Below the pieces are notes generated by a model. It searched no databases. It saw nothing but the letters and a program-made list of their open reading frames with translations, and was not told the DNA's origin. 64,000 bases of DNA from Heterodontus francisci (Eukaryota): NCBI RefSeq assembly GCF_036365525.1, contig NC_090399.1:66768862-66832861 (forward strand), given 5' to 3'. Shown here piece after piece: positions 28,135-63,254 of the stretch (positions are counted from its first letter, which is position 1; the number at the start of each line of letters is the position of its first letter). The position numbers and the translations under genes were made by a program.

Positions 28135-28239
28135 AACGGAAGTCTGTCTCCCTGCTCCCCATTATTGTCGGTGTTCTGGTTGCTTTTGTTCTGCTGATCA
28201 TCGCTGTCATCGTGGGTGTCGTCTTCTTCAAAAAGAAAG
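28135..28239 (+). CDS. UAA: MHC class I heavy chain, connecting peptide/transmembrane exon (exon 5 equivalent)
   Basis: CTAAT branch-like site, pyrimidine tract and TCAG acceptor at 28131-34; GTAGGA donor at 28240. The 105-bp phase 1-1 exon encodes (E)RKSVSLLPIIVGVLVAFVLLIIAVIVGVVFFKKK, a hydrophobic helix plus basic stop-transfer, and joins the downstream exons in frame. UAA lineage is inferred from recalled tail similarity only. Confidence 0.88.
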
Positions 28240-28320
28240 GTAGGAATTGGAGAGAAAAAGGGCAGATGCTCACTGGGGCCGTGCGGACTCTGGGTGATGT
28301 AAGTTTGGGGAAGGGGGACA

Positions 28321-30780
28321 GGGGTGTGTTTGGGGGCCCAGTGCGGGCTGGGATTGCTGGTGGGTGAGGAATGGTGACCCAGGGTGGAGTGGGGGGGTGT
28401 TTGGTGGCCCAGGGTGGGGGTGGGATTGCCAGTGTGTGGGGAATGGTGACTCGGGGTGGAGTGGGGGGAGTGTTTGGGGGCCCAGGGTGGGGGTGGGATT
28501 GCCAGTGGGTGGGGAATGGTGACCCGGGATGGAGTGGGGGGAATGTTTGGTGACCCAGGGTGGGGGTGGGATTGCTGGTGGGTGGGGAATGGTGACCCAG
28601 GGTGGAGTGGGGGGCTGTTTGGTGGCCCAGGGTGGGGGTGGGATTGCCAGTGTGTGGGGAATGGTGACTCGGGGTGGAGTGGGGGGAGTGTTTGGGGGCC
28701 CAGGGTGGGGGTGGGATTGCCAGTGGGTGGGGAATGGTGACCCGGGATGGAGTGGGGGGAATGTTTGGGGGCCCCGGTTGGGGGTGGGATTGCCAGTGGG
28801 TGGGGAATAATGACTCGGGGTGGAGTGGGGGAGTGTTTGGGGGCCCAGGGTGGGGGTGGGATTGCTGGTGGGTGGGGAATGGTGACTCGGGGTGGAGTGG
28901 GGAAGTGTTTGGGGGCCCAGGGTGGGGGTGGGATTGCTGGTGGGTGGGGATTGGTGACACGGGGTGGAGTGGGGGGAGTGTTTGGGGGCCCAGGGTGGGG
29001 GTGGGATTGCCAGTGTGTGGGGAATGGTGACCCGGGATGGAGTGGGGGGAGTGTTTGGGGCCCAGGGTGGGGGTGGGATTGCTGGTGGGTGGGGAATGGT
29101 GACCCAGGGTGGAGTGGAGGAGTGTTTGGGAGCCCAGGGTGTGGGTGGGATTGCTGGTGGGTGGGGATTGGTGACTCGGGGTGGAGTGGGGGAGTGTTTG
29201 GGGGCCCAGGGTGGGGGTGGGATTGCCAGTGTGTGGGGAATGGTGACCCGGGATGGAGTGGGGGGAGTGTTTGGGGCCCAGGGTGGGGGTGGGAATGCTG
29301 GTGGGTGGGGAATGGTGACCCAGGGTGGAGTGGGGGGGTGTTTGGTGGCCCAGGGTGGGGGTGGGATTGCTGGTGGGTGGGGAATGGTGACCCAGGGTGG
29401 AGTGGGGGGGTGTTTGGTGGCCCAGGGTGGGGGTGGGATTTCCAGTGTGTGCGGAATGGTGACTCGGGGTGGAGTGGGGGAGTGTTTGGGAGCCCAGGGT
29501 GGGGGTGAGATTGCCAGTGGGTGGGGAATGGTGACTCGGGGTGGAGTGGGGGGGTGTTTGGGGGCCCAGGGTGGGGGTGGGATTGCCAGTGGGTGGGGAA
29601 TGGTGACTCGGGGTGGAGTGTGGGAGTGTTTGGGGCACAGGGTGGGGGTGGGATTGCTGGTGAGTGGGGAATGGTGACCCGGGGTGGAGTGGAGGAGTGT
29701 TTGGGAGCCCAGGGTGTGGGTGGGATTGCCAGTGGGTGGGGAATGGTGACTCGGGGTGGAGTGGGGGAGTGTTTGGGAGCCCAAGGTGGGGGTGGGATTG
29801 CTGGTGTGTGGGGAATGGTGACCTGGGATGGAGTGGAGGAGTGTTTGGGGGCCCAGGGTGTGGGTGGGATTGCCAATGGGTGGGGAATGGTGACTCGGGG
29901 TGGAGTGGGGGAGTATTTGGGGGCCCAGGGTGGGGGTGGGATTGCTGGTGGGTGGGGAATGGTGACTCGGGGTGGAGTGGGGGGGTGTTTGGGGAACCAG
30001 GGTGGGGGTGGGATTGCCAGTGGGTGGGGAATGGTGACTCGGGGTGGAGTGGGGGGGGTGTTTGGGGGCCCAGGGTGGGGGTGGGATTGCTGGTGGATGG
30101 TGAATGGTGACTCGGGGTGGAGTGGGGGGGTGTTTGGGGACCCAGGGTGGGGGTGGGATTGCTGGTGGGTGGGGAATGGTGACTCGGGGTGGAGTGGGGG
30201 AGTGTTTGGGGGCCCAGGGTGGGGGTGGGATTGCCAGTGGGTGGGGTATGGTGACTCGGGGTGGAGTGGGGGGAGTGTTTGGGGGCCCAGGGTGGGGGTG
30301 GGATTGCTGGTGGGTGGGGAATGGTGACTCGGGGTGGAGTGGGGGGTGTTTGGGGGCCCAGGGTGGGGGTGGGATTGCCAGTGGGTGGGGAATAATGACT
30401 CTGGGTGGAGTGGGGGAGTGTTTGGGGGCCCAGAGTGGGGGTGGGATTGCTGGTGGGTGGCGAATGGTGACTCGGGGTGGAGTGGAGGAGTGTTTGGGGG
30501 CCCAGGGTGGGGGTGGGATTGCCAGTGGGTGGGGAATGGTGACTCGGGGTGGAGTGGGGCAGTGTTTGGGGGCCCAGGGTGGGGGTGGGATTGCTGGTGG
30601 GTGGGGATTGGTGACTCGGGGTGGAGTGGGGGAGTGTTTGGGGGCTCAGGGTGGGGGTGGGATTGCCAGTGTGTGGGGAATGGTGACCCGGGATGGAGTG
30701 GGGGGAGTGTTTGGGGGCCCAGGGTGGGGTTGGGATTGCCAGTGTGTGGGGAATGGTGACCCGGGGTGGGGTGTGGGGTG
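28321..30780. repeat. G-rich minisatellite, ~72-bp unit (71-73), about 33-34 copies
   Basis: Tandem unit GGGTGGGGGTGGGATTGCCAGTGGGTGGGGAATGGTGACTCGGGGTGGAGTGGGGGAGTGTTTGGGGGCCCA, with GCCAG/GCTGG variants. Confidence 0.97.
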
Positions 30781-31517
30781 GCTCCGGGTCTGAAGATGGT
30801 GAACAAGGAAATGTCGACACTGGGTCCAGTGAGCGGAGGAGAGGATGTTCTTTCGGAACCACAAATAAAGGCAAAACTAAACGATGTGAAGTAATTAAAC
30901 CAGGAGAGGGATAGAAATGGGAAATGTGTGAGTAAAATATTCGAACAGAATGACAGTGTTAGTGTTTGTGTCCCAAGTCAGCATTATTTATACAAACACA
31001 TAGAGTATCAGGAACAAGTTCCATGAATTGCAGACTTGAATTCAATCTGGAGGCTATGACAAGGCAGCCATTAAGGAGACAGGGATGGAAGATGGGGAGG
31101 AGTGGGAATGAAATATACCAGGTTATCCGGTCCACAGGAAAGATCGGAAAAATGGTGAAGGAGGAACAGTTACCTTAGTGATGAAAGATGAAATCACTTC
31201 AGTGGGAAGAGAGGATATAACCAGAGTTCAGCAGGCAGTGGAGAACTTATGGGTCGTATTAAGAAATTGAGAAGTATTTAAGACGAGCGGGAGTGCTGTA
31301 TAGACCCCCGGGTAGTAGCTGTGAAGCTGTAACTTGTATAAAGTTTAGATAAGCAAGTAGTCAAACCGGAATGGTTTTAATAAGGGATTTTAACTTTCAT
31401 TATAGACTGGGATAAGCAGACTACCACACATCAGAAAGGTAGTGAATTTCTAGAGTGTGTCCAGGATAGTTTTCAGAAACGTCCCAGAACCAACAAGGAG
31501 ACATGCTCTATTAGATT

Positions 31518-33543
31518 CTTTTTTTTTCTTTTGGGCCTCCTTATCTCGAGAGACAATGGATACGCGCCTGGAGGTGGTCAGTGGTTTGTGAAGCAGCGCC
31601 TGGAGTGGCTATGAAGGCCAATTCTGGAGTGACAGGCTCTTCCACAGGTGCTGCAGAGAAATTTGTTTGTTGGGGCTGTTGCACAGTTGGCTCTCCCCTT
31701 GCGCCTCTGTCTTTTTTCCTGCCAACTACTAAGTCTCTTCGACTCGCCACAATTTAGCCCTGTCTTTATGGCTGCCCGCCAGCTCTGGCGAATGCTGGCA
31801 ACTGACTCCCACGACTTGTGATCAATGTCACACGATTTCATGTCGCGTTTGCAGACGTCTTTATAACGAAGACATGGACGGCCGGTGGGTCTGATACCAG
31901 TGGCGAGCTCGCTGTACAATGTGTCTTTGGGGATCCTGCCATCTTCCATGCGGCTCACATGGCCAAGCCATCTCAAGCGCCGCTGACTCAGTAGTGTGTA
32001 TAAGCTGGGGGTGTTGGCCGCTTCAAGGACTTCTGTGTTGGAGATATAGTCCTGCCACCTGATGCCAAGTATTCTCCGAAGGCAGCGAAGATGGAATGAA
32101 TTGAGACGTCGCTCTTGGCTGGCATACGCTGTCCAGGCCTCGCTGCCGTAGAGCAAGGTACTGAGGACACAGGCCTGATACACTCGGACTTTTGTGTTCC
32201 GTGTCAGTGCGCCATTTTCCCACACTCTCTTGGCCAGTCTGGACATAGCAGTGGAAGCCTTACCCATGCGCTTGTTGATTTCTGCATCTAGAGACAGGTT
32301 ATTGGTGATAGTTGAGCCTAGGTAGGTGAACTCTTGAACCACTTCCAGAGCGTGGTCGCCAATATTGATGGATGGAGCATTTCTGACATCCTGCCCCATG
32401 ATGTTCGTTTTCTTGAGGCTGATGGTTAGGCCAAATTCATTGCAGGCAGACGCAAACCTGTCGATGAGACTCTGCAGGCATTCTTCAGTGTGAGATGTTA
32501 AAGCAGCATCGTCAGCAAAGAGGAGTTCTCTGATGAGGACTTTCCGTACTTTGGACTTCGCTCTTAGACGGGCAAGGTTGAACAACCTGCCCCCTGATCT
32601 TGTGTGGAGGAAAATTCCTTCTTCAGAGGATTTGAACGCATGTGAAAGCAGCAGGGAGAAGAAAATCCCAAAAAGTGTGGGTGCGAGAACACAGCCCTGT
32701 TTCACACCACTCAGGATAGGAAAGGGCTCTGATGAGGAGCCACCATGTTGAATTGTGCCTTTCATATTGTCATGGAATGAGGTGATGATACTTAGTAGCT
32801 TTGGTGGACATCCGATCTTTTCTAGTAGTCTGAAGAGACCACGTCTGCTGACGAGGTCAAAGGCTTTGATGAGATCAATGAAAGCAATGTAGAGGGGCAT
32901 CTGTTGTTCACGGCATTTCTCCTGTATCTGACGAAGGGAGAACAGCATGTCAATAGTCGATCTCTCTGCACGAAAGCCACACTGTGCCTCAGGGTAGACG
33001 CGCTCGGCCAGCTTCTGGAGCCTGTTCAGAGCGGCTCGAGCAAAGACTTTCCCCACTATGCTGAGCAGGGAGATTCCACGGTAGTTGTTGCAGTCACCGC
33101 GGTCACCTTTGTTTTTATAGAGGGTGATGATGTTGGCATCGCGCATGTCCTGGGGTACTGCTCCCTCGTCCCAGCACAGGCATAGCAGTTCATGTAGTGC
33201 TGAGAGTATAGCAGGCTTGGCACTCTTGATTATTTCAGGGGTAATGCTGTCCTTCCCAGGGGCTTTTCCGCTGGCTAGGGAATCAATGGCATCACTGAGT
33301 TCCGATTTGGTTGGCTGTATGTCCAGCTCATCCATGACTGGTAGAGGCTGGGCTGCATTGAGGGCAGTCTCAGTGACAGCATTCTCCCTGGAGTACAGTT
33401 CTAGGTAGTGCTCAACCCAGCGGTCCATCTGTTTGCGTTGGTCAGTGATTATGTCCCCCGATTTAGATTTGAGGGGGGTGATCTTCTTGATGGTTGGCCC
33501 AAGAGCTCTCTTCATGCCATCATACATTCCTCTGATGTTTCAA
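31518..33543 (-). mobile_element. 5'-truncated RTE (BovB-like) non-LTR retrotransposon, young
   Basis: 10-bp TSD CTATTAGATT at 31508-31517 and 33544-33553, A-rich 3' tail on the minus strand, and an intact RT ORF. Confidence 0.92.
31578..33527 (-). CDS. RTE-clade reverse transcriptase with C-terminal C2H2-type motif (endonuclease lost by truncation)
   Basis: 649 aa without stops. Motifs KAPGKD, NYRGISLL, QCGFR, DLIKAFD, GVKQGCVLAP, LFADD, FTYLGS, RRLRWLGHV and CSTCGRACHSRIGLHSH. Confidence 0.9.
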   Translation of the reverse strand: MYDGMKRALGPTIKKITPLKSKSGDIITDQRKQMDRWVEHYLELYSRENAVTETALNAAQPLPVMDELDIQPTKSELSDAIDSLASGKAPGKDSITPEIIKSAKPAILSALHELLCLCWDEGAVPQDMRDANIITLYKNKGDRGDCNNYRGISLLSIVGKVFARAALNRLQKLAERVYPEAQCGFRAERSTIDMLFSLRQIQEKCREQQMPLYIAFIDLIKAFDLVSRRGLFRLLEKIGCPPKLLSIITSFHDNMKGTIQHGGSSSEPFPILSGVKQGCVLAPTLFGIFFSLLLSHAFKSSEEGIFLHTRSGGRLFNLARLRAKSKVRKVLIRELLFADDAALTSHTEECLQSLIDRFASACNEFGLTISLKKTNIMGQDVRNAPSINIGDHALEVVQEFTYLGSTITNNLSLDAEINKRMGKASTAMSRLAKRVWENGALTRNTKVRVYQACVLSTLLYGSEAWTAYASQERRLNSFHLRCLRRILGIRWQDYISNTEVLEAANTPSLYTLLSQRRLRWLGHVSRMEDGRIPKDTLYSELATGIRPTGRPCLRYKDVCKRDMKSCDIDHKSWESVASIRQSWRAAIKTGLNCGESKRLSSWQEKRQRRKGRANCATAPTNKFLCSTCGRACHSRIGLHSHSRRCFTNH

Positions 33544-34401
33544 CTATTAGATTAATAATGAGTAATAAGACCGATTTAGTTAGCACCCTAACAGTGGGAG
33601 AACATTGATCAAATAGTGATCATAATATGATTGAGTTCTCGTAGTGTTGAAATGGAGAAACATGAAACAGCCACTCAGATTCTAGAATTAGGTAATGCTG
33701 ATTTTAACAGGATAAGACACAGATTGTCCAGAGTAAACTGGACAAATCTATTAATGAGTAAAACAGAAGATCAGTGGGAGGTGTTCAAAAGAGAATTTAA
33801 AGTGATCCAAAAGCCGTTTATATCACTAAAGGGCAAGTGTTCTACCTGCCAAAAAAGACAGCTATGGGCAATTAAAAAGGTCAGAAATAACAAACTGTAA
33901 AAAACATACAGAAATGTAAAAAATAGCACAGATCCTGGTGAATGAGGAAGGTGCAAAGAACAGCAAAGGATGACACAGCAGATAGTAAGGGTTACAAGAA
34001 GAAGTACGAAAAGAAACTTGCAAGGGTGATCAAAATCAACACAAAGAACTTAGTTACATTCGGAAAAAGAGGGTCAGAAGCAAAGCAGTCCCTTTGAAAA
34101 CTGATGATGGTGATGTTGTCAATGAGAAGGAAATGGTGGACATGTTGAATAATTAATTTGTGTCAATATTTACAGTGGAGGAAGAGAAAAGAATGACAGA
34201 CTTCCCAAGGAAACTATTATTGGATCAGAGACAGGAACTTAATAAAATTAACATCAGTAATGTAACAGTAATGGAGAAATTAATGACACTAAAAAGTGAT
34301 AAATCCCCAGGATCAGATGGTTCTATCCCAGAGTTTGAAAGGAAGGAGGTGAGAACAGTGCAGATCCCTAACTATAATCTTCTCTCAGGTCTAACCCCGA
34401 C

Positions 34402-36213
34402 ATGGTCATCAAACCTGCAGACAAGGGTGGTGCTGTTGTTGTATGGCGTACCGACCTCTACCTTGCAGAAGCTCAACGCCAACTCACAGACACCTCTTCC
34501 TACCTCCCTCTGGACCATGACCCCACCACCGAACATCAAGCCACCGTCCAAAGGACTGTCACTGACCTCATCTCCTCTGGAGATCTTCCCTCTACAGCTT
34601 CCAACCTCATAGTCCCGCAACCCCGGACAGCCCGCTTCTATCTCCTTCCCAAAATCCACAAACGGGACTGTCCCGGCAGACCCATTGTGTCAGCCTGCTC
34701 CTGCCCAACTGAACTTATTTCTTCCTATCTAGACTCTATCTTTTCTCCGCTGGTCCAGTCTCTTCCCACCTACATCCGTGACTCTTCTGACGCCCTACGT
34801 CATTTTGACAATTTCCAGTTTCCTGGTCCCAACCGCCTCCTCTTCACTATGGACGTCCAATCGCTCTCCACCTCCATCCCCCACCAGGATGGTTTGAGGG
34901 CTCTCCGCTTCTTCCTGGAACAGAGGCCCAACCAGTCCCCATCCACCACCACCCTCCTCCGCCTGGCTGAACTTGTTCTCACATTGAACAACTTCTCCTT
35001 CAACTCCACGCACTTCCTTCAAGTAAAAGGTGTCGCTATGGGTACCCGCATGGGTCCTAGTTATGCCTGTCTTTTTGTGGGATATGTCGAGCATTCTTTG
35101 TTCCAGTCCTACTCAGGCCCCCTCCCCCAACTCTTTTTCCGGTACATTGATGACTGTATCGGTGCCGTTTCCTGCTCCCGCCCCGAACTCGAAAACTTTA
35201 TCAACTTTGCTTCCAATTTCCACCCTTCTCTCACCTTTACATGGTCCATCTCTGACACTTCCCTTCCCTTCCTCGACTTCTCTGTCTCCATCTCTGGGGA
35301 TAGGTTGTCTACCAATATCCATTATAAGCCCACTGACTCCCACAGCCACCTCGACTACACTTCTTCACACCCTACCTCCTGTAAGGACTCCATTCCATTC
35401 TCTCAGTTTCTCCGTCTCCGACGCATCTGCTCTGATGATGCTACCTTCCATGACGGTGCTTCTGATATGACCTCCTTTTTCCTCAACCGAGGATTTCCCC
35501 CCACTGTGGTTGACAGGGCCCTCAACCGTGTCCGACCCATTCCCCGCACCTCTACCCTCACCCCTTCCCCTCCCTCCCAGAACCGTGACAGGGTTCCCCT
35601 TGTCCTCACTTTTCATCCCACCAGCCTCCATATCCAAAGGATCATCCTCCGCCATTTTCGCCACCTCCAGCGTGATGCCACTACCAGTCGCATCTTCCCC
35701 TCCCTTCCCCTGTCAGCATTCCGAAGGGATCGTTCCCTCCGCGACACCCTGGTCCACTCCTCCATTACCCCCACCACCTCGTCCCCGTCCCAGGGCACCT
35801 TCCCTTGCAATCGCAGGAGGTGTAATACCTGCCCATTTACCTCCTCTCTCCTCACTATCCCAGGCCCCAAACACTCCTTTCAGGTGAAGCAGCGATTTAC
35901 TTGTACTTCTTTCAATGTAGTATACTGTATTCGCTGCTCACAGTGTGGTCTCCTCTACATTGGGGAGACCAAGCGCAGACTGGGTGACCGCTTTGCGGAA
36001 CATCTCCGCTCAGTCCGCAAGCAGGACCCTGAGCTTCCGGTTGCTTGCCATTTCAACACTCCCCCCTGCTCTCATGCTCACATCTCTGTCCTGGGATTGC
36101 TGCAGTGTTCCAGTGAACATCAACGCAAGCTCGAGGAACAGCATCTCATCTACCGATTAGGCACACTACAGCCTGCCGGACTGAACATTGAGTTCAATAA
36201 TTTCAGAGCATGA
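34402..36213 (+). CDS. Penelope-type reverse transcriptase plus GIY-YIG endonuclease
   Basis: 603 aa uninterrupted. Motifs IKPADKGG, LPKIHK, GRPIVS, DVQSL, GVAMG, RYIDD, FLD, CNRRRCNTC, VVYCIRC...YIGET, HFN and GLN. Confidence 0.92.
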   Translation: MVIKPADKGGAVVVWRTDLYLAEAQRQLTDTSSYLPLDHDPTTEHQATVQRTVTDLISSGDLPSTASNLIVPQPRTARFYLLPKIHKRDCPGRPIVSACSCPTELISSYLDSIFSPLVQSLPTYIRDSSDALRHFDNFQFPGPNRLLFTMDVQSLSTSIPHQDGLRALRFFLEQRPNQSPSTTTLLRLAELVLTLNNFSFNSTHFLQVKGVAMGTRMGPSYACLFVGYVEHSLFQSYSGPLPQLFFRYIDDCIGAVSCSRPELENFINFASNFHPSLTFTWSISDTSLPFLDFSVSISGDRLSTNIHYKPTDSHSHLDYTSSHPTSCKDSIPFSQFLRLRRICSDDATFHDGASDMTSFFLNRGFPPTVVDRALNRVRPIPRTSTLTPSPPSQNRDRVPLVLTFHPTSLHIQRIILRHFRHLQRDATTSRIFPSLPLSAFRRDRSLRDTLVHSSITPTTSSPSQGTFPCNRRRCNTCPFTSSLLTIPGPKHSFQVKQRFTCTSFNVVYCIRCSQCGLLYIGETKRRLGDRFAEHLRSVRKQDPELPVACHFNTPPCSHAHISVLGLLQCSSEHQRKLEEQHLIYRLGTLQPAGLNIEFNNFRA

Positions 36214-36581
36214 CAGCCCCCCACTTTACTTTCATTTTTAGTCATTTTTAGTTATTTTTTCTTCCTTTTTTTTGCATTCCTTTTTACATTTTTTGCATTT
36301 ATTTCATTTCATCTTAGTTTGTTCAGTTTGCTTCCCCACTGTTTTTTTCAGGTTGTTTTTCTTCAAGTTTGCACTTGCTGATGTTCTATGTTCAGTATAT
36401 TCACACCTAATCTGTACTAATGCTTTGTCTTTCAAAACACCATTAACATATTGTTTGCCTTTGCTCCGTGACCTTTTGGTCAGCTATGTGGCCTGGTCCA
36501 ATCTGCACCTTCTCCTTTGTTATCTCTTGCCCAACCCCCACCTCACTTGTTTATAATCTGTGACTTTTCTAATATTTGTCC

Positions 36582-36616
36582 GTTCCGAAGAAGGGTCACT
36601 GACCCGAAACGTTAAC
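36582..36616 (+). ncRNA. Minimal type I hammerhead ribozyme-like motif in the PLE 3' end (variant core CCGAAGA)
   Basis: GTT-CCGAAGA-A-GGGTC-ACT-GACCC-GAAA-CGTT-AAC: stem I GTT/AAC, 5-bp stem II, GAAA and a loopless palindromic stem III. Confidence 0.6.
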
Positions 36617-36975
36617 TCTGCTTCTCTTTCCACAGATGCTGCCAGACCTGCTGAGTGAATCCAGCATTTCTTGTTTTTGTTATAATCTTCTGAAGTTTGC
36701 TTGATTCAGGAACTGTTCCTTAAGATTGGAAAATTGTGCCTGTCAGTCTGCTATTGAAGGAAGGTGGAAATTATCGACCAGTTAGCTTAACATCTGTTAT
36801 CAGAAAATTACTAGAGACAATAATTTAATAGGGAAATTCAGCACCTTGAACATTGTCAGCTGATCATAGAAAACCAGCATGGATTTGATATTGAATTGTT
36901 TGAAGAGGTGATTAAAGGAATAGGGGAATGTCTATGGATGTTATTTTTATGGTCTTCCAGAAGGCATTTGATAAA

Positions 36976-37421
36976 TCACAGAATCACAGAATAATACAGT
37001 GCAGAAGAGGCCCTTCGGCCCATCGAGTTAGCACCGATGCATTAAAGACACCTGACCTGTCTACCTAATCCCATTTGCCAGCACTTGGCCCATAGCCTTG
37101 AATGTTATAACGTGCCAAGTGCTCATCCAGGTACTTTTTAAAGGATGTGAGGCAACCTGCCTCTACCACCCTCCCAGGCAGTGCATTCCAGACCGTCACC
37201 ACCCTCTGGGTAAAGAAGTTCTTCCTCAAATCCCCCTTAAACCTCCCACCCCTCACCTGAAACTTGTGACCTCTCGTAACTGACCCTTCAACTTAGGGGA
37301 ACAGCTGCTCCCTATCCACCCTGTCCATGTCCCTCATAATCTTGTACACCTCAATCAGGTCACCCCTCAGTCTTCTCTGCTCCACCGAAAACAACCCAAG
37401 CCTATCCAACCTCTCTTCACA
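36976..37421 (-). mobile_element. CR1 LINE 3' fragment inserted into the older CR1
   Basis: Minus strand reads RGGRFKGDLRKNFFTQRVVTVWNALP, with an (ATTCTGTG)2 tail. TSD GATAAA at 36970-75 and 37422-27; removing the insert restores the host KAFDKVP. Confidence 0.9.
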
Positions 37422-37912
37422 GATAAAGTTCCTCAAAAGAGACTGTTTAGTTAAAGGTGAAGCTCAGGGAATTGAAGATAAATTATTGACCTGTTAGGAA
37501 GTTAGCTGAGTGACAGGAGACGGAGAGTAGGGATAATGGACAGGTAGTGTAATTGTCAGGATGTGATTAGTCATGTCCCACAAGGATCTGTGTTGGAGTC
37601 TCAACTATTCACTGTATTTATTAACAAACAATGAGATAGAAAATCACATATCCAGATTTGTAGACGACACAATAATAGACAGTACTGTAGGCAGTGTAGA
37701 TGGAAGCATAAAATTACAAAGAGATTAATTGAAGAGATAAAATTGATAGATTAAGTGAATGGGAAAAACTATGGCAAATGGATTTCAATGTAGGCAAATG
37801 TGACATCATCCACTTTGGACCTATGAAAGGTAAACCAGAGTACTTTCTGAATGGTGAAATACTAGAAACAGTGGTGGTCCAGGTTCTAGGTACGCAGATC
37901 ATTAAAACGTCA

Positions 37913-38232
37913 GCCTCACAACTCCAGGGACCCGGGTTCGATTCCGGGTACTGCCTGTGTGGAGTTTGCAAGTTCTCCCTGTGTCTGCGTGGGTTTTCTC
38001 TGGGTGCTCCGGTTTCATCCCACATGCCAAAGACTTGCAGGTTGATAGGTTAATTGGCCATTATAAATTGCCCCTAGTATAGGTAGGTGGTAGGGAAATA
38101 TAGGGACAGGTGGGAATGTGGTAGGAATATGGGATTAGTGCAGGATTAGTATAAAATGGGTGGTTTATGGTCGGCACAGACTCGGTGGGCCGAAGGGCCT
38201 GTTTCAGTGCTGTATCTCTAAACTAAACTAAA
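37913..38232 (+). mobile_element. tRNA-derived SINE, HE1/V-SINE type (5' end truncated)
   Basis: B-box GGTTCGATTCC at 37935-45, V-domain-like core TGTGTGGAGTTTGCA..TTCTCCCTGTGTCTGCGTGGGTTT, CR1-like 3' end GGGCCGAAGGGCCTGTTTC and a (CTAAA)n tail. Confidence 0.8.
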
Positions 38233-38579
38233 ATATTGTGGAATCTTGCCTTACTCTTGATAACAATGGCACTTAACAAGGAGACAAAGTATTTGTTCTG
38301 ACAAACTACTTAATATCCGTATAGTTTGGGTAGAAGGTAAATACTCACTATACTGCTAGTTGGTAACCTCGCGTGTAAGAGTTCGTCCTCCAGTAGTCGG
38401 TTCGCTGAATGAGTTCTCTTCACATCTGTAGTGACTGACTAGGTCACTCTTCCCAACTGCAGCAACAATATCCTTGAGGGCTGTGGCTTTCTCCCCCTTT
38501 CTGACCCTGGTCCTGTGATATAATGAGTAATGTCTCAAATTGGGTCATCCGATTGGGTTTCAGTGCCTTATCAATCCCA

Positions 38580-40077
38580 TGATTGAGGCCATGGCGAGGC
38601 AATGTTCTTTGGGAACTGGGCTGACCGATCCCTTGTCCCCTTCACCATCAGGTCAGATTACCTGAAGGTGCTGGGGATATGGTTCGGAAGGGCCGGGGCA
38701 TGCACCCAAACCTGGGAGGAGCGAGTAGCCAAGGTACAACACAAGTTGAGCATGTGGGGGCAGTGATCTCTCTCCATTGTGGGTAAGAACCTGGTCATCA
38801 GTTGCGAGGCGCTCACGTTGTTGCTGTTCGTGGCGCAGGTCTGGCCCATACCCCACTCCTGCACTGTGGCGGTCACCCAAGCCATTTTCCGCTTCATCTG
38901 GGGATCTAAAATGGACCGGATCCGGAGGGACACGATGTTCAAACCTCTGGATAAGGGCGGAAAAAATGTATCCAACGTGGCCCTCATCCTGATGACCACC
39001 TTCGTGTGCGGCTGCATCAAGCTGTGTGTAGATCTCCAGTACGTAAACTCCAAGTGTCACTACGTGCTGAGGTTCTGTCTGTCCCCGGTGTTGCGAAGGA
39101 TGGGCCTGGTCACATTGCTGTGGAACGCTCCATGCAGTTGGACCGTGCCGTACCACCTATCCTTCGTGGAGCAGTTTCTGCGGGAAAACACCTTTGACCA
39201 CTGATCCATCAGCAGTGGTCTGCACGGAATGTCCTCAAGGCCCTACGGGAAAAGGAGACGGTGGATCCTGTTGGATGGTTCCCCGAGCAGACCGTCAAAG
39301 TCATTTGGCGGAATGCCTCATCACCAGAACTTTCAAACAAGCACCAAGACGTAGCTTGGCTGGTGGTGAGAAGGGCGCTCCCCGTCAGATCCTTCCTGCA
39401 CGCCCGAAGTCTCGCCCCCTCCGCACAATGCCCCTGCGGTGGCTGTGGTGGGGAAGAGACGGTCGCCCACCTCCTCCTGGAATGTGCCTTTGCAAAGCAG
39501 GTGTGGAAAGAGATGCAGTGGTTTTTGTCGAGGTTCATCCCAAGCAGCTCTGTAACACAGGAGTCTGTGCTCTATGGGCTGTTCCCAGGGACACACACTG
39601 AGACAAACATCAACTGCTGCTGGAGGACTATCAATTTGGTGAAAGACGCCCTTTGGTCTGCCCGAAACTTTCTGTCTTCCAGCGCAAAGAGTTGTCCACG
39701 ACCGAATGTTGCAGACTGGCACATTCCAAGGTCCAGGACTAGGTGCTGAGGGACGCACTAAAGCTTGGGGCAGCCGCAGCAAAGGCTCAATGGGGAAAGA
39801 CCACAGTGTAAGGTCCCCCCACCAAGCTGAACTGAGGGGCTGGACCCATGGAAAACCCCTCGAACTGTATCGGGAAAATTTTGTGTGCTGTAAAATGCAA
39901 AAATGTATGTGGCATGAAAATGAAATGGAAGGGTTGTGAGGCAACTCATGATTGTATAGAAGGAAACTGATCATCTTTGCACTGGTTGTATTTTTTGACG
40001 ATGCTGTTTTAAACTGTTTGGGAATGTAATTTTTGCAGATTTTTATGAATAAAGTATATTTTGGAAAATAAAAAAAA
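38580..40077 (+). mobile_element. Tx1/L1-clade LINE 3' fragment (degenerate ORF2 C-terminus)
   Basis: Motifs YLKVLGIWF, FRFIWG, GG..V.N and a CCHC zinc knuckle (CPCGGCGGEETVAHLLLEC). AATAAA plus poly(A) tail. 18-bp TSD AGTGCCTTATCAATCCCA at 38562-79 and 40078-95. Confidence 0.9.
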
Positions 40078-40905
40078 AGTGCCTTATCAATCCCACCATG
40101 GCTATGCAAGACCACCTACATGTGGTCATATCCTGCTCTCAGCAGGTGGGAGGGGGTGGGTTTGGGTCCATACCAGCAATGATGTGATATGTACATCTTA
40201 ATAAGGCAGGAGGAAATCATTCACACATAGTCTGAGAGGTCATTGTCTGAGAACTGTTGTAGACAATGTTTGATGTTGTAATAGTCTGAGACGACCACCT
40301 TAATGACATGTCCTGACTCGGGTGTGTGTCGGGTTTCTGTGTGTGTCCTTGTTCAGTTAAACTGTCTTTATTTTTAACAAGTCCAATATAAGCCCCAATG
40401 ATGAGGTCTTTGGTCGGAATTCCTCTTCTCCCTATGTCCCGATGTCCTCCGCACTCCATGTTTTTACCAGCCTTTGTCAAACTCTGCACATGAAAGCACA
40501 TTAAATCACCAAGTCCCAGTTTATATCTGTAACAAGATATTGTTACAATTTGTCAGAACAGTTAAAACACAAACTGAAATTCAGCAAAAACTGTTACAAT
40601 CAGATAGCTGAATAAAAACATGGCATAAAAATACATTCCCCTCGCAGCACGTACAGAAAATAATCTAAAAGACTAATGAAATGCTGACCTTTATATCTAG
40701 AGGTCCAGGATATAAGGGGGTAGAAGTCACACCTCAGCTATACAAAGCCCTGGTTAGCCTGGAGTTCCTGTGAACAGTTCTGGATACCAGGATGAATATA
40801 TAGGTCTTGGAGGGAGTGCAGCACGGATTTACCAGAATGATGAAATGAGAACAGAAAGTGCCGGAAATACTCAGCAGGTGTGGCAGCATCTGTGGAGAGA
40901 GAAAC

Positions 40906-40946
40906 ACAGTTAACTTTTTAAGTCTGTGACCCTTCATCAGAACTGT
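40906..40946 (-). ncRNA. Degenerate hammerhead-like motif in the second PLE
   Basis: Minus strand reads ACAGTT-CTGATGA-A-GGGTC-ACA-GACTT-AAAAA-GTT-AACTGT: canonical CUGAUGA, 6-bp stem I, GAAAC box mutated. Confidence 0.5.
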
Positions 40947-41314
40947 CAAAGGTTAGAAATGTAACAGTCTTTGAGCAAGTGGAGGAGGGGAGGGGGTGAA
41001 GTAGAACAAGAAGGACAGACTGTGATCGGACGGAGGGGGAGATGTTAAATGAGAGATGTCATGGAATATAATTGTAAATGAAGTGCTAAATAGTTACAGC
41101 AAAAGACAAAGCACAGTCCAGAGAGAGTGTTAAAGGCAGAATAATGAACAGGTTTGTACGAAAACAAAAACATGAAAAATAAGTTTGAGACTAACACATG
41201 GTTAAAAAATAAATAAATAAATCTGAAATATATATTTAAAATAAATACACAAAAAAAATGGGGCTCATGTTCTGAAATTATTGATCTTAATATTGAGTCC
41301 AGAAGGATGTAGAG

Positions 41315-42405
41315 TGCTTGAAGTCTTACTTCAATTGTATAGAACGTCAGTTAGACCGCACCTGGAGTACTGTGTGCAATTTTGGTTCCCTTACCTTAGG
41401 AAGGATATTATTGCCACAGAGAGAGTGCAACAAAGGTTCACTGGACTTGTTCCCAAGATGGCAGTTCTGGTCACCTCATTACAGAAAGGATGTAATTGCA
41501 CCAGAGAGGGTACAGAGGAGGTTTACAAGGATGTTGCCAGGACTGGAAAATGCAGCTATGAGGAAAGATTGGATAGGCTGGGGTTGTTCTCTTTCGAACA
41601 GAGAAGGCTGAGGGGAGATCTGATTGAAATGTATACAATTTTGAGGGGCTTGGATAGAGTGGAGGTGAAGGGTCTATTCACCTTAGCAGAGAGGTCAGTG
41701 ACGAGGGGGAATCGATTTAAAGTGATTGGTACAAAATTAGAGGGGAGATGAGGAAAAACTTGTTCACCCAGAGGGTGGTGGGAGTCTGGAACTCACTGCC
41801 TGAAAGGGTAGTTGAGGCAGAAACCCTCAACTCGTTCAAAAGGAGTCTGGATATACACCTCAAGTGCTGTAATCTGCAGGGCTACGGACCAAATGCTGGA
41901 AGGTGGGATTAGAATAGGTGGATCGTTTTTTGGCCGGCAGGGGCATGATGGGCCAAGTGGCCTCTTTCTGTGCCTTAAACCTTCTATGATTCTATGTCGG
42001 GACTGTCCTATGAAGAGAGATTGGGGAAACTGGGCCTGTATTGTCTAGAGTTTCGAAGAATGTGAGGTGATCTCTTTTAAACCTACAAAATACTTAAAAG
42101 GATAGACAGAGTAGATGCAGGCAGCTACAGGTGATCTGTTCAACAAATCATTTCCTCAATCCAGCAACAGTTCAAAATTAAAGTTCATATGACAAAACAA
42201 ATGTGCCTCGTTCTTGGCAGGTGGGGGCTTACATGAACATGTTTAAAGCAGAGATTGACAGATTTCTAAGTACAAATGACATAAGGGGATATGGGGATAG
42301 TGTGGGGGAAAAAGGCATTGAAGTGGATGATCAGCCATGATCATATTGAATGGCAGAGCAGACTCGATGGGCTGAATGGCCTACTCCTCCTGCTCCTATG
42401 TTCCT
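41315..42405 (+). mobile_element. Two nested CR1 3' fragments (inner copy ~41461-41995 inside an outer copy)
   Basis: LQLYRTSVRPHLEYCVQFW followed by a second QFWSPHYRKD...RFTRMLPGL ending in a CTATGATTCTAT tail. The outer copy resumes (GLSYEER-like) and ends with CCTATGTTCCT. Confidence 0.8.
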
Positions 42406-44664
42406 AGTCAAAAAATGAGGTGCTGTTCCTCGAGCTTGCGTTGATGTTCACTGGAACACTGCTACAGACCAAGAACAGAAATATGGGTATGAGAGCAGGA
42501 AGGAGAATTAAAATTGCAAGCAACCGGAAGCTCAGGATCATGCTTGCAGTCCGAGCAGAGGTGTTCTGCAAAGTGGTCGCCCAGTCTGCGTTTGGTCTCC
42601 CCAATGTAGAGGAGACTGCACTGTGAGCAGTGAATTGAAAGAAGTACAAGTAAATCACTGCTTCACCTGGAGGAAGTGTTTGGGAACTTGGATAGTGAGG
42701 AGAGAGGAGGTAAAAGGGTAGGTATTACACCTGGGATTGCAGGGGAAGGTGTCGTGGAAAAGGGAAGGTGTCGGGGGTAATGGAGGAGTGGACCAGGGTG
42801 TCACTGAGATTATTGATCCTTTCGGAATGCTGACAGGGGAGGGGAGGAGAAGCTGTATTCGGCATCACATTGGAGGTGGTGGAAATGGCGGAGGATGATC
42901 CTTTGGATGTGGAGGCTGGTGGGGTGGAAAGTGAGGACAAGGGGAACCCTGTCACGGTTCTGGGAGGGAGGGGAAGGGGTGAGGGAAGAGGTGCAGGAAA
43001 TGGGCCGGACACGTTTGAGGGCCCTGTCAACCACAGTTGGGGGAGGTATCCTTGGTTGAGGAAAAAGGAAGACCTATCAGAAACGCTGTTGTGGAAGGTG
43101 GCATCATCAGAGCAGATGCGTTGGAGACGGAGAATGTGAGGAAGTGTAGTCAAGGTAGCCGGGGGAGTTGGTGGCTTATAATAAATACTAGTGGACAGCC
43201 TATTCCCAGAGATGGAGACAGAGAAGTCGAGGAGGGGAAGTGTCAGAGATGGATTATGTGAGGGTGGGAGAAGGGTGAAATTTGGAAGTAAAGTTGATAA
43301 AGTTTTCCAGTTCGGGGCGGGAGCAGGAAACGGCATCAATACAGTCATCAATGTACCGGAAAAAGAGTTGGGGGAGGGGGCCTGAGTAGGACTGGAACAA
43401 GGAATGTTCGACATATCCCACAAAAAGACAGGCATAACTAGGACCCATAGCAACATCTTTTATTTGAAGGAAGTGAGTGGAGTTGAAGGAGAAGTTGTTC
43501 AATGTGAGAACAGGTTCAGCCAGGCGGAGGAGGGTGGTGGTGGATGGGGACTGGTTGGGCCTCTGTTCCAGGAAGAAGCGGAGAGCCCTCAAACCATCCT
43601 GGTGGGGGATGGAAGTGTAGAGAGATTAGACGTCCGGAGTGAAGAGGAGGCGGTTAGGGCCAGGAAACTGGGAACTATCAAAATGACGTAGGGAGTTGGA
43701 AGAGTCACGGATGTAGGTGGGAAGAGATTGGACAAGGGGAGAAAAAATAGAATCAAGATAGGAGGCAGTAAGTTCAGTGGGGCAGGAACAGGCTGAAGTG
43801 ATGGGTCTACTGGGACAGTCCTGTTTGTGGATTTTAGGACGGAGATAGAAGCAATCTGTTCGGAGTTGTGAGACTGAGGTGGGAAGCTGTAGAGGGAAGA
43901 TCTCCCGAGGAGATGAGGTCATTGATAGTCCTGGATATGGTAGCTTGATGTTTGGTGATGGTGTCATGGCCCGGGGGAGGTAGGAAGAAGTGTCTGTGAT
44001 TTGGCACTCAGCCTCTGCAATGTAGAGGTCGGTCCACCAGACAACAGCAGCACCAGCCTTGTCAGCAGGTTTGATAACAATATCAGGGTTAGAATTGTAT
44101 TCCATTGAATTTTGCTCTTAATTTACCAGAATAATACCTGGACTCCAAGGGTTAAGCTATGAGGAGAGAATACACAAACTAGGATTGTATTGCATTGAAT
44201 TTAGGTGAAGGGGTGATTTGATGGCCGTTTTTAAGATATTAATGGAGATAGAGAGAAACTTTTTCCACTGTTTGGGGAGTGTAGGACTCGGAGCATTGTC
44301 GAGAAATTAGAGCCAGACCTTTCAGCAGTGAAATTAGGTGATGCTTCTCACAAGGGTGGTAGAAGTTTGGAATTCTCTTCCACAACAGCAACAGTTAATT
44401 TTAAAATGAAGTAGTAGTTTTTTTGTTAGCCAAAGGTATGAAGGGATATGAGGCAAAGGTGGGTCGATGGAATTAGATTGCAGATCAGTCATGAACTCAT
44501 TGAATGAGTAAATGGCCTACTCCTGTTCCTATGTACTTATCTTCCTATGAGTGGTGGTCCCAGGGGGAAGGTGACTGGGAATGATAAAGTTGTCACTATC
44601 TTCCGTCTCTCTCCTCTCTGACTGTCAGTGTCTGGTCACTAACTGAGAATTCCTTGTTTTACAG

Positions 44665-44697
44665 CGGGGGAGAAGACCGGCTATAATCAAGCGAAGA
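44665..44697 (+). CDS. UAA: MHC class I cytoplasmic exon 1 (exon 6 equivalent)
   Basis: CACTAAC branch point, TTGTTTTACAG acceptor and GTAAGT donor. 33 bp, phase 1-1, encoding AGEKTGYNQAK with the Y-x-x-A motif of classical class I tails. Same length as HLA class I exon 6. Confidence 0.9.
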
Positions 44698-44971
44698 GTA
44701 AGTTTACCTCAAACTACAACTGGATCTTCAACTAACTGTGTGAAGAGCAGGAATTGCTGCTAATAGTGTCTGTACAGTGAACAGTTTATTGCTCTGTCTT
44801 CATCTGTGTGTGGTATCTTCCTCTCTGTGTGTATTCCCCTGCCCCCAACAGCATCCCCCTCCCCTCCTACTCCCCCCACCCCACCGCCCGGTCTTTGTGT
44901 GTGTTACCCCCTGTCTGTCTCTCTGTCTCTAATAGTGAACAGATTTTTAATACTTGTCCTTCTATTAACAG

Positions 44972-45018
44972 CTTCTGATAGGGGGGAATCCTCATCAAAC
45001 TCCTCTGCCAATGCCTGA
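44972..45018 (+). CDS. UAA: MHC class I cytoplasmic exon 2 (exon 7 equivalent) with stop codon
   Basis: CTTCTATTAACAG acceptor. Encodes TSDRGESSSNSSANA* (TGA at 45016-18). The exon ends at 45019 before GTATGA and is 48 bp, like HLA exon 7, with an SD/Ser-rich tail. Confidence 0.9.
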
Positions 45019-45384
45019 GGTATGAATATTTCAATAGTATATTCTTCACTGGTCTTCTAACTGGGCTATTACAGTTGGTGTTTCCTGTACAATCTCCTGG
45101 GTGGAATTTGAGTGCAGTGTCTCTCTCTATACACATCAAAGGCTAGATCATACAATTCAACACTCAGCTTTGAGAATGGCCGACTGGAGATGCTGGTCCT
45201 GTTCAGTCTGAGACTGGAGATATGAGTGTTGGGGAGTGATAAAGACTTCTCATAACATTTCCTGTCAGGACGTGGCCTCCTGTCAGCCTCTCAGTTTCAT
45301 CTAAAGGAGGCAGGTTTTCTTCAAATTGTTCACTGGGGTTTCGTGTCGTCTCTCCCCGAGGATTCAGTGTCACTAGTTTTTGGA

Positions 45385-45645
45385 GAGTGAATGGTCTAAT
45401 GAGTTTTGCTGCTGGTGTTCGGATGGGTCTGATGGTGTTTCGAGGGCATCTTGGTTTTGCTGCTGATGTTTGGGGGTGGCAATTGATGGGTTTTGGTGCT
45501 GGTGTTTGGTTGGGTCTGGTGGGTTTTGCTGATATTTGGGTGGGCTTTATGGGTTTTTCTGGTATTTGGATGCATTGATGGGTTCTGTTGAAGTTTGGGT
45601 GGTTCTGGTGGGTTTTGCTGCTGGTGTTTGGTTGGCTCTGATGGA
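45385..45645. repeat. GT-rich degenerate low-complexity repeat in the last intron
   Basis: Recurring GGTTTTGCTGCTGGTGTTTGG and GGTCTG[A/G]TGGG motifs. Confidence 0.6.
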
Positions 45646-45687
45646 TTTGCCTCTCTCTCTAACCATGTATTTATTTCTCTTCCCCAG

Positions 45688-46440
45688 TGGTCTCCCGTGT
45701 CCCGCTGAAATTCCAGGGAGTTCAGTGCACAGTCAGCGGGATGAATTGCTGAATCAGGGAGGGTGGTTTATCATCGAGGTGATGGCGAGTGACTGATCAT
45801 AGCTCTACATCTGTGACTCTGTTTAATTGTAACTGGGGGGGGGGGTTGTTGATTCTGAATGTCTGTACTCTCTGATCATTTTGAACTTTGACCTGTATGG
45901 TTTACTCTGCATATGCTCTGGGAATGTTGAATCATTCACTGATTTCAATGGGGGGGCTTGTTTACACTTTTGCTTTTTAAATGTTAACTGTCTTTGAATC
46001 CTTTTCCTTCATCAAGAATAATTAATGAGCGTGACCCTGATCATCTCCTCACCCTCACTCAGTTTCTGGTTAAATTGTCCGATGTACTAACTGGGAGTGG
46101 AGATACACTCACACTCCGTCCAAGTGGCCCTTGACCAACTGGAACCCACAGGGACTGGTCCCTGGGGCGGGGGAGGGGGGCCTAATCCCCAAGACCATCA
46201 ATCCTGATGGAGGTTGTAGATGGGGTGGGAGAGTGAGGTGGTCCTGCTCTGCGTGACAGTCCCGGGACATGGGAATGTGTTGATCATTGGGAGATCGGGG
46301 AGTGTGATCAGATTTATTTTTTGCTGGGGTTTATGGGGGGAGGGGAGTGGTGGGGCATGTGCTTTGTGAGAGGGGGCTCTGTAATGCAATTTTGTATTCC
46401 CTAAATTCCAATAATAAATGAGGTTTGGACTCCACTTCCT
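45688..46440 (+). other. Probable non-coding terminal exon (3' UTR) of the MHC class I gene
   Basis: CTCTAAC branch point and TTTCTCTTCCCCAG acceptor ending at 45687. AATAAA at 46413-46418 is followed by a T/GT-rich tract. The 3' end is approximate. Confidence 0.65.
46413..46418 (+). terminator. Candidate polyadenylation signal of the MHC class I gene
   Basis: AATAAA about 725 bp into the putative last exon, with a CCTGTCTCTGTCT downstream element, just before TE sequence resumes. Confidence 0.55.
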
Positions 46441-63250: not shown

Positions 63251-63254
63251 CCCC

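What the first reader, a model, noticed from the sequence alone, without database searches (positions are those of the whole stretch)
28135..46440. Hidden MHC class I gene: four small exons spread over 18 kb of repeats
Seen: three phase-1 exons with good splice signals join to ERKSVSLLPIIVGVLVAFVLLIIAVIVGVVFFKKK-AGEKTGYNQAK-TSDRGESSSNSSANA*. Known: 33- and 48-bp cytoplasmic exons and a Y-x-x-A motif are hallmarks of classical class I genes (HLA exons 6 and 7). Inference: this is a shark classical-type (UAA lineage) locus that keeps the mammalian exon sizes, with its stop 1 nt before a final intron (NMD-neutral). The ORF track never assembles it.
Basis: partly seen in the sequence, partly recalled or inferred. 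Interest (0 to 1): 0.8.

Follow-up and report, generated by a model that had tools for sequence, protein, structure and literature searches.

The report
Tail exons of shark MHC-I gene
These four small exons are real and are spliced as predicted in RNA, but they are the ordinary tail end of a shark MHC class I gene whose main exons lie upstream of the window, not a hidden new gene.

Summary
There is a 105-nt membrane-anchor exon (28135-28239), a 33-nt exon (44665-44697) and a 48-nt exon (44972-45019). The 48-nt exon ends in TGA one base before its donor site. A 753-nt last exon (45688-46440) carries an AATAAA signal. All have AG/GT borders and are in phase 1.

RNA contigs from the same species cover the exons 100 to 10,000 times deeper than the introns. 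They show the 44697/44972 and 45019/45688 joints. One joint recurs in a second species. The long 28239/44665 joint is seen only indirectly. RNA ends at 44665 continue into a sequence that matches nothing in the window except the end of the 105-nt exon, with 2 mismatches. That points to an allele or sister gene.

Class I identity rests on exon architecture (33 + 48 nt, a Y-x-x-A tyrosine, the stop placement) and on genomic context. No sequence search could reach significance with such short pieces. The joined-peptide search was left out by rule.

This scan had already followed up the upstream part of the same gene in the overlapping window and called it expressed and annotated. So the gene is not hidden. 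The "classical UAA" label is unproven: one sample expresses at least four variants of the 33-nt exon. The finding is ordinary and of low interest.

The parts
1..28010 (.). 47-bp satellite array of about 580 copies. It fills the part of the intron upstream of the membrane-anchor (TM) exon that lies in the window. Context only, not part of the coding model.
   Evidence: Tandem Repeats Finder, (period 47, 580.5 copies, 90% matches). Sequence read.
28135..28239 (+). Connecting-peptide, transmembrane and stop-transfer exon, 105 nt, phase 1 at both ends. It reads (E)RKSVSLLPIIVGVLVAFVLLIIAVIVGVVFFKKK.
   Evidence: AG|..|GT borders. The RNA loose-end consensus before 44663 matches only 28215-28237, with 2 mismatches. 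There is a weak, non-significant match to the TM segment of PDB 7edo_A, 'MHC class I antigen' (E 0.35).
28240..44664 (+). 16,425-nt intron. It holds a 72-bp G-rich minisatellite (28321-30778) and several retrotransposon copies: reverse-transcriptase ORFs at 31578-33527 (-) and 34402-36213 (+), a zf-RVT piece at 39261-39749, and a decayed inverted copy at 42725-44105 (-).
   Evidence: RVT_1 E 7.8e-33; zf-RVT E 1.1e-12.
44665..44697 (+). First cytoplasmic exon, 33 nt, phase 1. It reads (A)GEKTGYNQAK, with the tyrosine in a Y-x-x-A motif.
   Evidence: Exon bin depth 2.7e3-5.5e4 against 0-36 in flanking intron bins. Joint 44697->44972 GT..AG.
44972..45019 (+). Second cytoplasmic exon, 48 nt. It reads (T)SDRGESSSNSSANA and ends in stop TGA at 45016-45018, one base before the donor site.
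   Evidence: Joints 44697->44972 and 45019->45688, the second also seen in organism B (X5).
45688..46440 (+). Last exon, entirely 3'UTR in the main isoform, with AATAAA at 46413-46418. In a minor exon-skipping isoform it would supply a 21-residue alternative C-terminus, M + VSRVPLKFQGVQCTVSGMNC (the M is formed across the splice junction).
   Evidence: Depth is 8e3-5e5 across the exon and about 0 after 46400. Joint 44697->45688 in X1 (163) and X2 (181).

Best explanation
Window 28135-46440 is the 3' end of an expressed shark (reportedly horn shark) MHC class I heavy-chain gene. It holds the transmembrane exon, two short cytoplasmic exons and a 3'UTR exon. The leader and alpha1-alpha3 exons lie upstream of the window, beyond a satellite-filled intron of more than 28 kb.

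The encoded tail works like other class I tails. This is inferred, not shown here.
- A 26-residue hydrophobic helix, flanked by RK and KKK, anchors the protein as a type I membrane protein.
- The membrane-proximal tyrosine in YNQA is the counterpart of the Tyr-320 YXXA endocytic and endolysosomal sorting signal.
- The serine-rich 48-nt exon is the counterpart of the regulatory exon 7, which carries phosphorylation sites in mammals.
- The stop codon sits one base before the last splice junction, so the final intron does not trigger nonsense-mediated decay.

Several closely related alleles or paralogues share this tail and are expressed together. Whether this copy is the classical (UAA) gene or a class Ib gene cannot be decided from the window.
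For: Shown:
- Exons, phases, splice sites, stop position and poly(A) signal.
- A very large exon-over-intron depth contrast and GT..AG joints at 44697/44972 and 45019/45688 in RNA contigs. One joint recurs in a second organism.
- The upstream partner of exon 44665 in RNA matches only the TM exon in the window.

Architecture:
- The literature places the conserved Tyr-320 (YXXA) in exon 6 and the conserved serines in exon 7 of class I genes. It describes separate small cytoplasmic exons (PMC3157908, PMC4950430, PMC12518231).
- The 33- and 48-nt sizes and the stop inside exon 7 of HLA-B are my own recollection of the HLA gene structure.

Weak sequence hint:
- The second-best PDB match of the TM exon, out of 177,635 sequences, is the TM segment of a chain named 'MHC class I antigen' (7edo_A, residues 308-333 of 362). 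E is 0.35, which is not significant.

Context, from unchecked scan notes:
- The overlapping upstream window holds class I exons of an expressed, annotated gene inside the same satellite.
- More class I parts lie 420 nt beyond the window's end.
Against: - No significant sequence match to any class I protein was obtained: Pfam, the 1.84-billion representative library, the word search and the PDB.
- The alpha-domain exons were not seen by me.
- The best-supported RNA ends shown at 44665 differ from the window's TM exon at 2 of 27 bases. The strong expression may therefore come mainly from an allele or a sister gene.
- The runs are recorded only as 'RNA?'. The exon/intron contrast and the joints argue strongly that they are RNA.
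Confidence: 0.8

Rival explanations
1. It is specifically the single classical (UAA, MHC-Ia) gene of this shark.
For: - The tail is very highly represented in RNA contigs, as expected for a broadly and strongly expressed classical gene.
- It has a complete tail with YXXA and a serine-rich exon.
- Sequence variation in the RNA could partly be classical-type allelic polymorphism.
Against: - At least four distinct versions of the 33-nt exon end occur in one sample (window-like GAAGA; AAATA; AACGA; and the GYNPAK form). If the sample is one diploid animal, that needs at least two loci.
- At 45912 the two variants are present at similar depth in X1 and X3, but only one is present in X2. All three runs come from the same sample. 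This looks more like different loci than like alleles.
- Scan notes put further class I parts, one called nonclassical with a nonsense codon, right beside the window. That resembles a multicopy Ib cluster, whereas elasmobranchs are reported to have a single Ia gene next to TAP and PSMB genes (PMC10751288).
- The YXXA motif is not restricted to classical genes (PMC4950430).
Confidence: 0.3
2. It is the tail of a nonclassical (class Ib, for example UBA- or UEA-type) multicopy class I gene.
For: - Several co-expressed variants share the tail.
- Neighbouring class I fragments or pseudogenes lie just beyond the window's end.
- Many class Ib genes are noted on the same chromosome piece.
- Multicopy Ib clusters are known in elasmobranchs (PMC10751288).
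Against: - Nothing in the window discriminates Ia from Ib.
- The very high apparent expression and the well-kept tail motifs would also suit a classical gene.
- All context comes from unchecked notes.
Confidence: 0.45
3. The window's copy is a silent or detached duplicate of the 3' end, and all the RNA comes from a paralogue elsewhere.
For: - The best-supported RNA ends joined to 44665 carry a TM-exon end with 2 mismatches to the window.
- Many laid contigs are only 90-99% identical to the window.
Against: - All four exons keep an open frame and canonical splice sites.
- Low-depth intron contigs lie on this locus with 0-1.2% differences. Examples are a 97-nt contig over 45619-45715 with no difference and a 250-nt contig over 44434-44683 with 3 differences. 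This looks like pre-mRNA of this locus or its allele.
- 77 to 542 of the laid contigs per run are at least 99% identical, though some of these lie on the flanking repeats.
- The window-like 44697/44972 joint has depth 6000 in X2.
- An earlier follow-up called the upstream gene expressed.
Confidence: 0.12
4. The exons belong to a non-MHC membrane protein of the immunoglobulin superfamily.
For: No significant homology to class I was obtained for any single exon. A transmembrane helix with a short tail is generic.
Against: - The combination fits class I: a phase-1 TM exon, a 33-nt exon with Y-x-x-A, a 48-nt serine-rich exon, and a stop at the end of that exon with an untranslated last exon.
- The locus is reported to be flanked on both sides by class I exons.
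- The only named full-length protein hit in the PDB for the TM exon is a class I chain.
Confidence: 0.05

Closest known systems
Mammalian classical MHC class I genes (HLA-A/-B/-C, H2-K), exons 5-8
   Same: - A single TM exon is followed by separate small cytoplasmic exons.
- The first cytoplasmic exon carries the single conserved tyrosine in a YXXA motif, and the second is serine-rich (PMC3157908, PMC4950430, PMC12518231).
- The sizes of 33 and 48 nt equal HLA exons 6 and 7. A stop inside the 48-nt exon with an untranslated last exon is as in HLA-B. Both points are my own knowledge and were not checked with a tool here.
   Different: - The TM exon is 105 nt.
- The serine-rich exon lacks an obvious counterpart of the mammalian S332/S335 context.
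- The introns are enormous: 16.4 kb between the TM exon and the first cytoplasmic exon, and more than 28 kb of satellite upstream. Mammalian class I introns are a few hundred bases.
- No significant residue-level similarity could be shown.
Exon 7-deleted (delta-7) splice variant of class I tails in mouse, cow and chicken
   Same: RNA contigs in two runs join the 33-nt exon directly to the last exon and skip the 48-nt exon (44697->45688). This is analogous to the natural delta-7 isoform (PMC3157908, PMC4950430).
   Different: - Skipping here removes the stop codon. It would add a 21-residue tail read from the usual 3'UTR exon.
- The contigs carry one mismatch (TGA for TGG at 45688-45690). They may therefore come from a paralogue that always skips, not from regulated alternative splicing.
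- The isoform is minor: depth 163-181 against thousands for the main form.
Elasmobranch class I lineages (UAA classical; UBA, UDA, UEA, UFA nonclassical)
   Same: The host group is a shark, and the location is reportedly within a chromosome region rich in class I genes. This fits the report that all elasmobranch class I genes map to the MHC (PMC10751288).
   Different: Lineage assignment needs the alpha1-alpha3 exons, which are outside the window. No reference tail sequences of these lineages could be obtained.

Membership tests
MHC class I heavy chain | alpha1/alpha2 peptide-binding superdomain (Pfam MHC_I) | not testable with these tools
   These exons are not in the window. Window 1-28010 is satellite, and no class I-like or Ig-like ORF was found elsewhere in it. 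Scan notes report such exons in the overlapping upstream window, but I could not read that DNA.
MHC class I heavy chain | alpha3 Ig C1-set domain exon spliced in phase 1 to the TM exon | not testable with these tools
   The acceptor at 28135 is in phase 1.
MHC class I heavy chain | 3' gene architecture: one TM exon, then separate short cytoplasmic exons (33 and 48 nt in HLA), then a last exon that is mostly or wholly untranslated | tested here: met
   The exons are 105, 33 and 48 nt plus a 753-nt last exon, all in phase 1, with the stop at 45016-45018. The joints are confirmed in RNA contigs. The HLA sizes come from my own knowledge.
MHC class I heavy chain | Single membrane-proximal tyrosine in a YXXA motif, encoded by the first cytoplasmic exon | tested here: met
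   The exon reads GEKTGYNQAK. The motif and its exon are described in PMC3157908, PMC4950430 and PMC12518231. An expressed variant in the same species keeps it (GYNPAK). The organism B contig reads Y-N-P-T instead.
MHC class I heavy chain | Conserved serine phosphorylation sites in the second cytoplasmic exon (S332/S335 in mammals) | tested here: inconclusive
   The exon is serine-rich (SDRGESSSNSSANA, 6 serines in 14 residues). No positional correspondence could be established without an alignment to reference tails.
MHC class I heavy chain | Significant sequence similarity of the TM and tail region to known class I proteins | tested here: inconclusive
   - Pfam gave generic TM hits only.
- The 1.84-billion representative library gave 0 hits.
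- The word search gave 0 hits among proteins of 48-152 aa.
- In the PDB, the TM segment of 7edo_A 'MHC class I antigen' was second best at E 0.35.
- The cytoplasmic exon read-throughs gave no hits.
- The pieces are too short for these tools. The joined search was left out by rule.
Classical MHC-Ia (shark UAA lineage) | Single locus, high polymorphism, conserved peptide-terminus anchoring residues, linkage to TAP1/2 and PSMB8/9 | not testable with these tools
   This needs the alpha1/alpha2 exons and the wider map. At least four tail variants in one sample, together with class I fragments next door, point to a multicopy setting. The criteria are taken from PMC10751288 and PMC4364491.

The most novel reading that the evidence does not exclude
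Sharks make a class I tail isoform by skipping the 48-nt serine-rich exon, the counterpart of mammalian exon 7. That would make delta-7-type tail regulation, known from mouse, cow and chicken, a feature of the jawed-vertebrate ancestor. Here the skipped form reads on into the usual 3'UTR exon and gains a 21-residue alternative C-terminus.
Probability: 0.25. Interest if true: 0.4.

Novelty: already known. Interest (0 to 1): 0.2.

Why it matters
The result confirms that the fine exon structure of the class I cytoplasmic tail is shared between a shark and mammals. The shared features are a 33-nt exon with the sorting tyrosine, a 48-nt serine-rich exon, and a stop at the last junction. That fits an origin of this tail design in the common ancestor of jawed vertebrates. 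This is in line with what the field already assumes, and the gene itself is reportedly annotated.

The practical value is for annotation. The 3' exons lie more than 28 kb of satellite and a further 16 kb of repeats away from the rest of the gene. Window-based or ORF-based scans will therefore split the gene.

Tried and rejected
- **Pfam on the TM exon:** only generic TM families, all below cut-off.
- **Word search on the 34-aa exon:** I repeated it with the 87-aa stop-free read-through 28104-28364, region 6-45. It gave 6 candidates and none scored. Only proteins of 48-152 aa were eligible, so full-length class I chains could not appear.
- **Representative-library search with the TM exon:** 0 hits at E <= 0.001. 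This is expected for 34 hydrophobic residues and is not evidence of absence.
- **PDB sequence search:** the TM exon gave only non-significant hits. The read-throughs around the two cytoplasmic exons gave nothing.
- **Full-text search for the tail peptides:** only false matches. A search for a paper stating the 33/48-bp exon sizes found none. A search for the PDB code 7EDO did not identify the source organism.
- **Other class I or Ig-like exons in the window:** pattern scans of six-frame translations found none.
- **Left out by rule:** the search with the joined (spliced) peptide.
Full report
**What is in the sequence**

| Exon | Coordinates | Length | Borders | Translation |
|---|---|---|---|---|
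| Membrane anchor (TM) | 28135-28239 | 105 nt | tttgtcag\|AACGGA ... AGAAAG\|gtaggaatt | RKSVSLLPIIVGVLVAFVLLIIAVIVGVVFFKKK |
| First cytoplasmic | 44665-44697 | 33 nt | ttttacag\| ... \|gtaagttta | GEKTGYNQAK |
| Second cytoplasmic | 44972-45019 | 48 nt | attaacag\| ... \|gtatgaata | SDRGESSSNSSANA* |
| Last | 45688-46440 | 753 nt | cttccccag\|TGGTCT | untranslated in the main form |

- The TM exon encodes a 26-residue hydrophobic segment flanked by RK and KKK.
- The TGA of the second cytoplasmic exon is at 45016-45018, one base before the donor site.
- The only AATAAA in the last exon is at 46413.
- All junctions are in phase 1.
- The introns are 16,425, 274 and 668 nt.
- Each exon is single-copy in the window. 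The window contains no N.

**Surroundings**

- Window 1-28010 is one 47-bp satellite of about 580 copies.
- The TM exon sits in a unique island of about 300 bp. On its other side is a 72-bp G-rich minisatellite (28321-30778, 34 copies).
- The rest of the 16.4-kb intron is retrotransposon debris. It holds an intact 649-aa reverse-transcriptase ORF at 31578-33527 (-), a 603-aa RT-bearing ORF at 34402-36213 (+), a zf-RVT piece, and a decayed inverted copy at 42725-44105.
- Downstream of the gene (46.5-64 kb) I found only more CR1-type RT fragments and a CT-rich low-complexity block. There was no class I-like or Ig-like ORF.
- The alpha-domain exons are therefore not in this window.

**RNA evidence**

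For the best holder the share of words held was 0.43, which equals the exon fraction of the query.

I laid X1, X2, X3 and X5 on 44300-46800. The runs are kept as Logan contigs and are recorded only as "RNA?". The pattern nevertheless shows they are RNA.

| Region | Summed depth (X1-X3) |
|---|---|
| 33-nt exon bin | 2.7e3 to 5.5e4 |
| 48-nt exon bin | 1.3e4 to 1.8e5 |
| Most of the last exon | 8e3 to 5e5, lower around the poly-G run and from 46148 on |
| Intron bins | 0-40 |
| After 46400 | about 0 |

The predicted joints are present with GT..AG ends:
- 44697->44972 appears in X2 (depth 6000) and X3.
- 45019->45688 appears in X3 (11 contigs), in X2, and in X5 from organism B. It is reported as 45017->45686 with the cut 2 places further right.

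**The long junction, 28239/44665**

The evidence is indirect. Contigs ending at 44663 continue upstream into ...CGTGGGTGTCGTCATCTACAAAAAGAA, in 3 to 9 contigs per run with agreement 0.99-1. A search of the whole window with up to 3 mismatches finds this string only at 28215-28237, the end of the TM exon, with 2 mismatches. Shuffled sequence gives none.

The exon spliced onto 44665 in the RNA is therefore the homologue of the window's TM exon. It encodes VVIYKKK in place of VVFFKKK, so it comes from another allele or a sister gene. A further 238 loose ends were not listed. The window's own variant may be among them.

**More than one gene shares this tail**

In the one sample (X1 = X2 = X3) the 3' end of the 33-nt exon occurs in at least four versions:
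- the window's GAAGA;
- AAATA;
- AACGA;
- a form reading ...GGCTACAATCCAGCAAAGA, which encodes GYNPAK (tables 5, 5c and 7).

If the sample is one diploid animal, this needs at least two expressed loci. At 45912 the two alternative letters are about equally deep in X1 and X3, but only one is present in X2. That also suggests different loci.

Low-depth intron contigs lie on this locus with few differences. One is a 97-nt contig over 45619-45715 with no difference. Another is a 250-nt contig over 44434-44683 with 3 differences. So this locus, or its allele, is probably transcribed itself.

**Is it MHC class I?**

No sequence tool could decide, because the pieces are 34, 10 and 14 residues long.
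- Pfam gave only generic TM families below cut-off.
- The word search refuses queries under 40 aa. With the 87-aa stop-free read-through it found nothing among proteins of 48-152 aa.
- The 1.84-billion representative library gave no hit.
- Against the PDB, the TM exon's second-best match of 177,635 sequences was the TM segment of 7edo_A, "MHC class I antigen" (residues 308-333 of 362). E was 0.35, which is not significant.
- The read-throughs around the cytoplasmic exons found nothing.

The case for class I therefore rests on architecture and context.

*Architecture.* The literature states the following about class I tails (PMC3157908, PMC4950430, PMC12518231):
- They are encoded by separate small exons.
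- Exon 6 carries the single conserved tyrosine (Y320) in a YXXA sorting motif.
- Exon 7 carries the conserved serines.

Here the first cytoplasmic exon reads ...GYNQAK and the second is serine-rich. That HLA exons 6 and 7 are 33 and 48 nt, and that HLA-B ends translation inside exon 7 with an untranslated exon 8, is my own recollection. I found no paper in the library that states the sizes.

*Context.* This comes from unchecked scan notes, so it is a lead and not proof.
- The overlapping upstream window was followed up as an expressed, already annotated horn shark class I gene. Three of its small exons sit in more than 60 kb of tandem repeats (s1-872915).
- The 28-kb satellite in my window was noted as filling the alpha3-TM intron (s1-874345). 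I confirmed the array itself.
- Class I parts lie 420 nt beyond the window's end (s1-872372, s1-872494).

**How it most likely works (inferred)**

- The hydrophobic helix, with positive charges on the cytoplasmic side, anchors a type I heavy chain.
- YNQA acts as the tyrosine-based endocytic and endolysosomal sorting signal needed for cross-presentation in mammals.
- The serine-rich exon acts as a negative regulatory, phosphorylatable module.
- The stop lies one base before the last exon junction. That is well inside the roughly 50-nt limit, so the last intron does not provoke nonsense-mediated decay.

**Classical or not**

The "UAA, classical" label is not supported by anything in the window. 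YXXA also occurs in nonclassical genes (PMC4950430). Elasmobranchs are reported to have a single MHC-Ia gene next to TAP and PSMB genes, plus multicopy Ib clusters (PMC10751288). This locus has co-expressed tail variants and class I fragments as neighbours, which leans toward a multicopy setting. I leave the lineage open.

**A small extra: an exon-skipping isoform**

Two runs contain contigs that join 44697 directly to the last exon and skip the 48-nt exon (depth 163 and 181). This resembles the natural exon 7-deleted isoform of mouse, cow and chicken (PMC3157908).

Here skipping removes the stop and would add a 21-residue tail: M, formed across the junction, followed by VSRVPLKFQGVQCTVSGMNC. 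The contigs carry one mismatch at the junction. They may therefore come from a paralogue that always skips, not from regulated splicing.

**Verdict**

- The class I reading is well supported by structure and context, but not by sequence homology.
- "Hidden" is wrong, because the scan had already followed up the same gene in the overlapping window.
- "Classical" is unproven.
- This is an ordinary, already known kind of gene end. Its only unusual trait is the extreme repeat-filled introns, which is the subject of another finding.

Noticed in passing
window 1-28010: Every 47-bp satellite unit carries an acceptor-like CACTACAG|G and a donor-like TGT|GTGAGG about 24 nt apart. That puts roughly 580 decoy splice-site pairs in the intron just upstream of the real TM acceptor. 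The long ORFs in the array (for example 13920-14312) are repeat artefacts.
   Followed up: partly
window 28321-30778: A 72-bp G-rich minisatellite (34 copies, period = 24 codons) stays open in several frames on both strands. It gives spurious ORFs of up to 916 aa (28124-30874, minus strand, P/T/H-rich) that overlap the TM exon antisense.
   Followed up: partly
window 31578-33527 (-) and 34402-36213 (+); 42725-44105 (-): The TM-cytoplasmic intron holds an uninterrupted 649-aa LINE reverse-transcriptase ORF (RVT_1 E 7.8e-33). It also holds a 603-aa RT-bearing ORF whose C-terminus looks like a GIY-YIG nuclease by eye, which would make it Penelope-like (not tested). A decayed inverted copy of the second element lies about 7 kb downstream.
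   Followed up: partly
window 45400-45640: A short tandem repeat (units like GGTTTTGCTGCTGGTGTTTGG) lies in the last intron and is length-polymorphic. One RNA-derived intron contig (X2) replaces 173 nt (45436-45608) with 25 other letters.
   Followed up: no
window 44300-44385 and 46568-46800: These two stretches flank the gene's 3' part and are covered at depths of about 1e3 to 2e4. The many contigs on them are 90-95% alike and have diverse loose ends. They are probably SINE-like repeats expressed from many loci and are not part of this gene.
   Followed up: no
window 45834-45846: A poly-G run in the 3'UTR breaks the RNA contigs. Some transcripts carry a 5-nt insertion (TGGCG) there. This is an allele or paralogue marker.
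   Followed up: no
window 44972-45837 (organism B contig, X5): A second organism has the same 45019/45688 joint and a 3'UTR about 95% identical. Its first cytoplasmic exon seems to be one codon longer and reads ...EKMTGYNPTR, so the alanine of Y-x-x-A is not kept there.
   Followed up: no
window 60400-63900: A CT-rich low-complexity block of about 3.5 kb gives long S/P/L-rich ORFs on the + strand and R/G/E-rich ORFs on the - strand. It is probably a degenerate simple repeat.
   Followed up: no
window 56541-56837 (+): A 98-aa ATG-started ORF (MDKMTDEGNRQLPTADKGG...) has no Pfam match. Its nature is unknown.
   Followed up: partly
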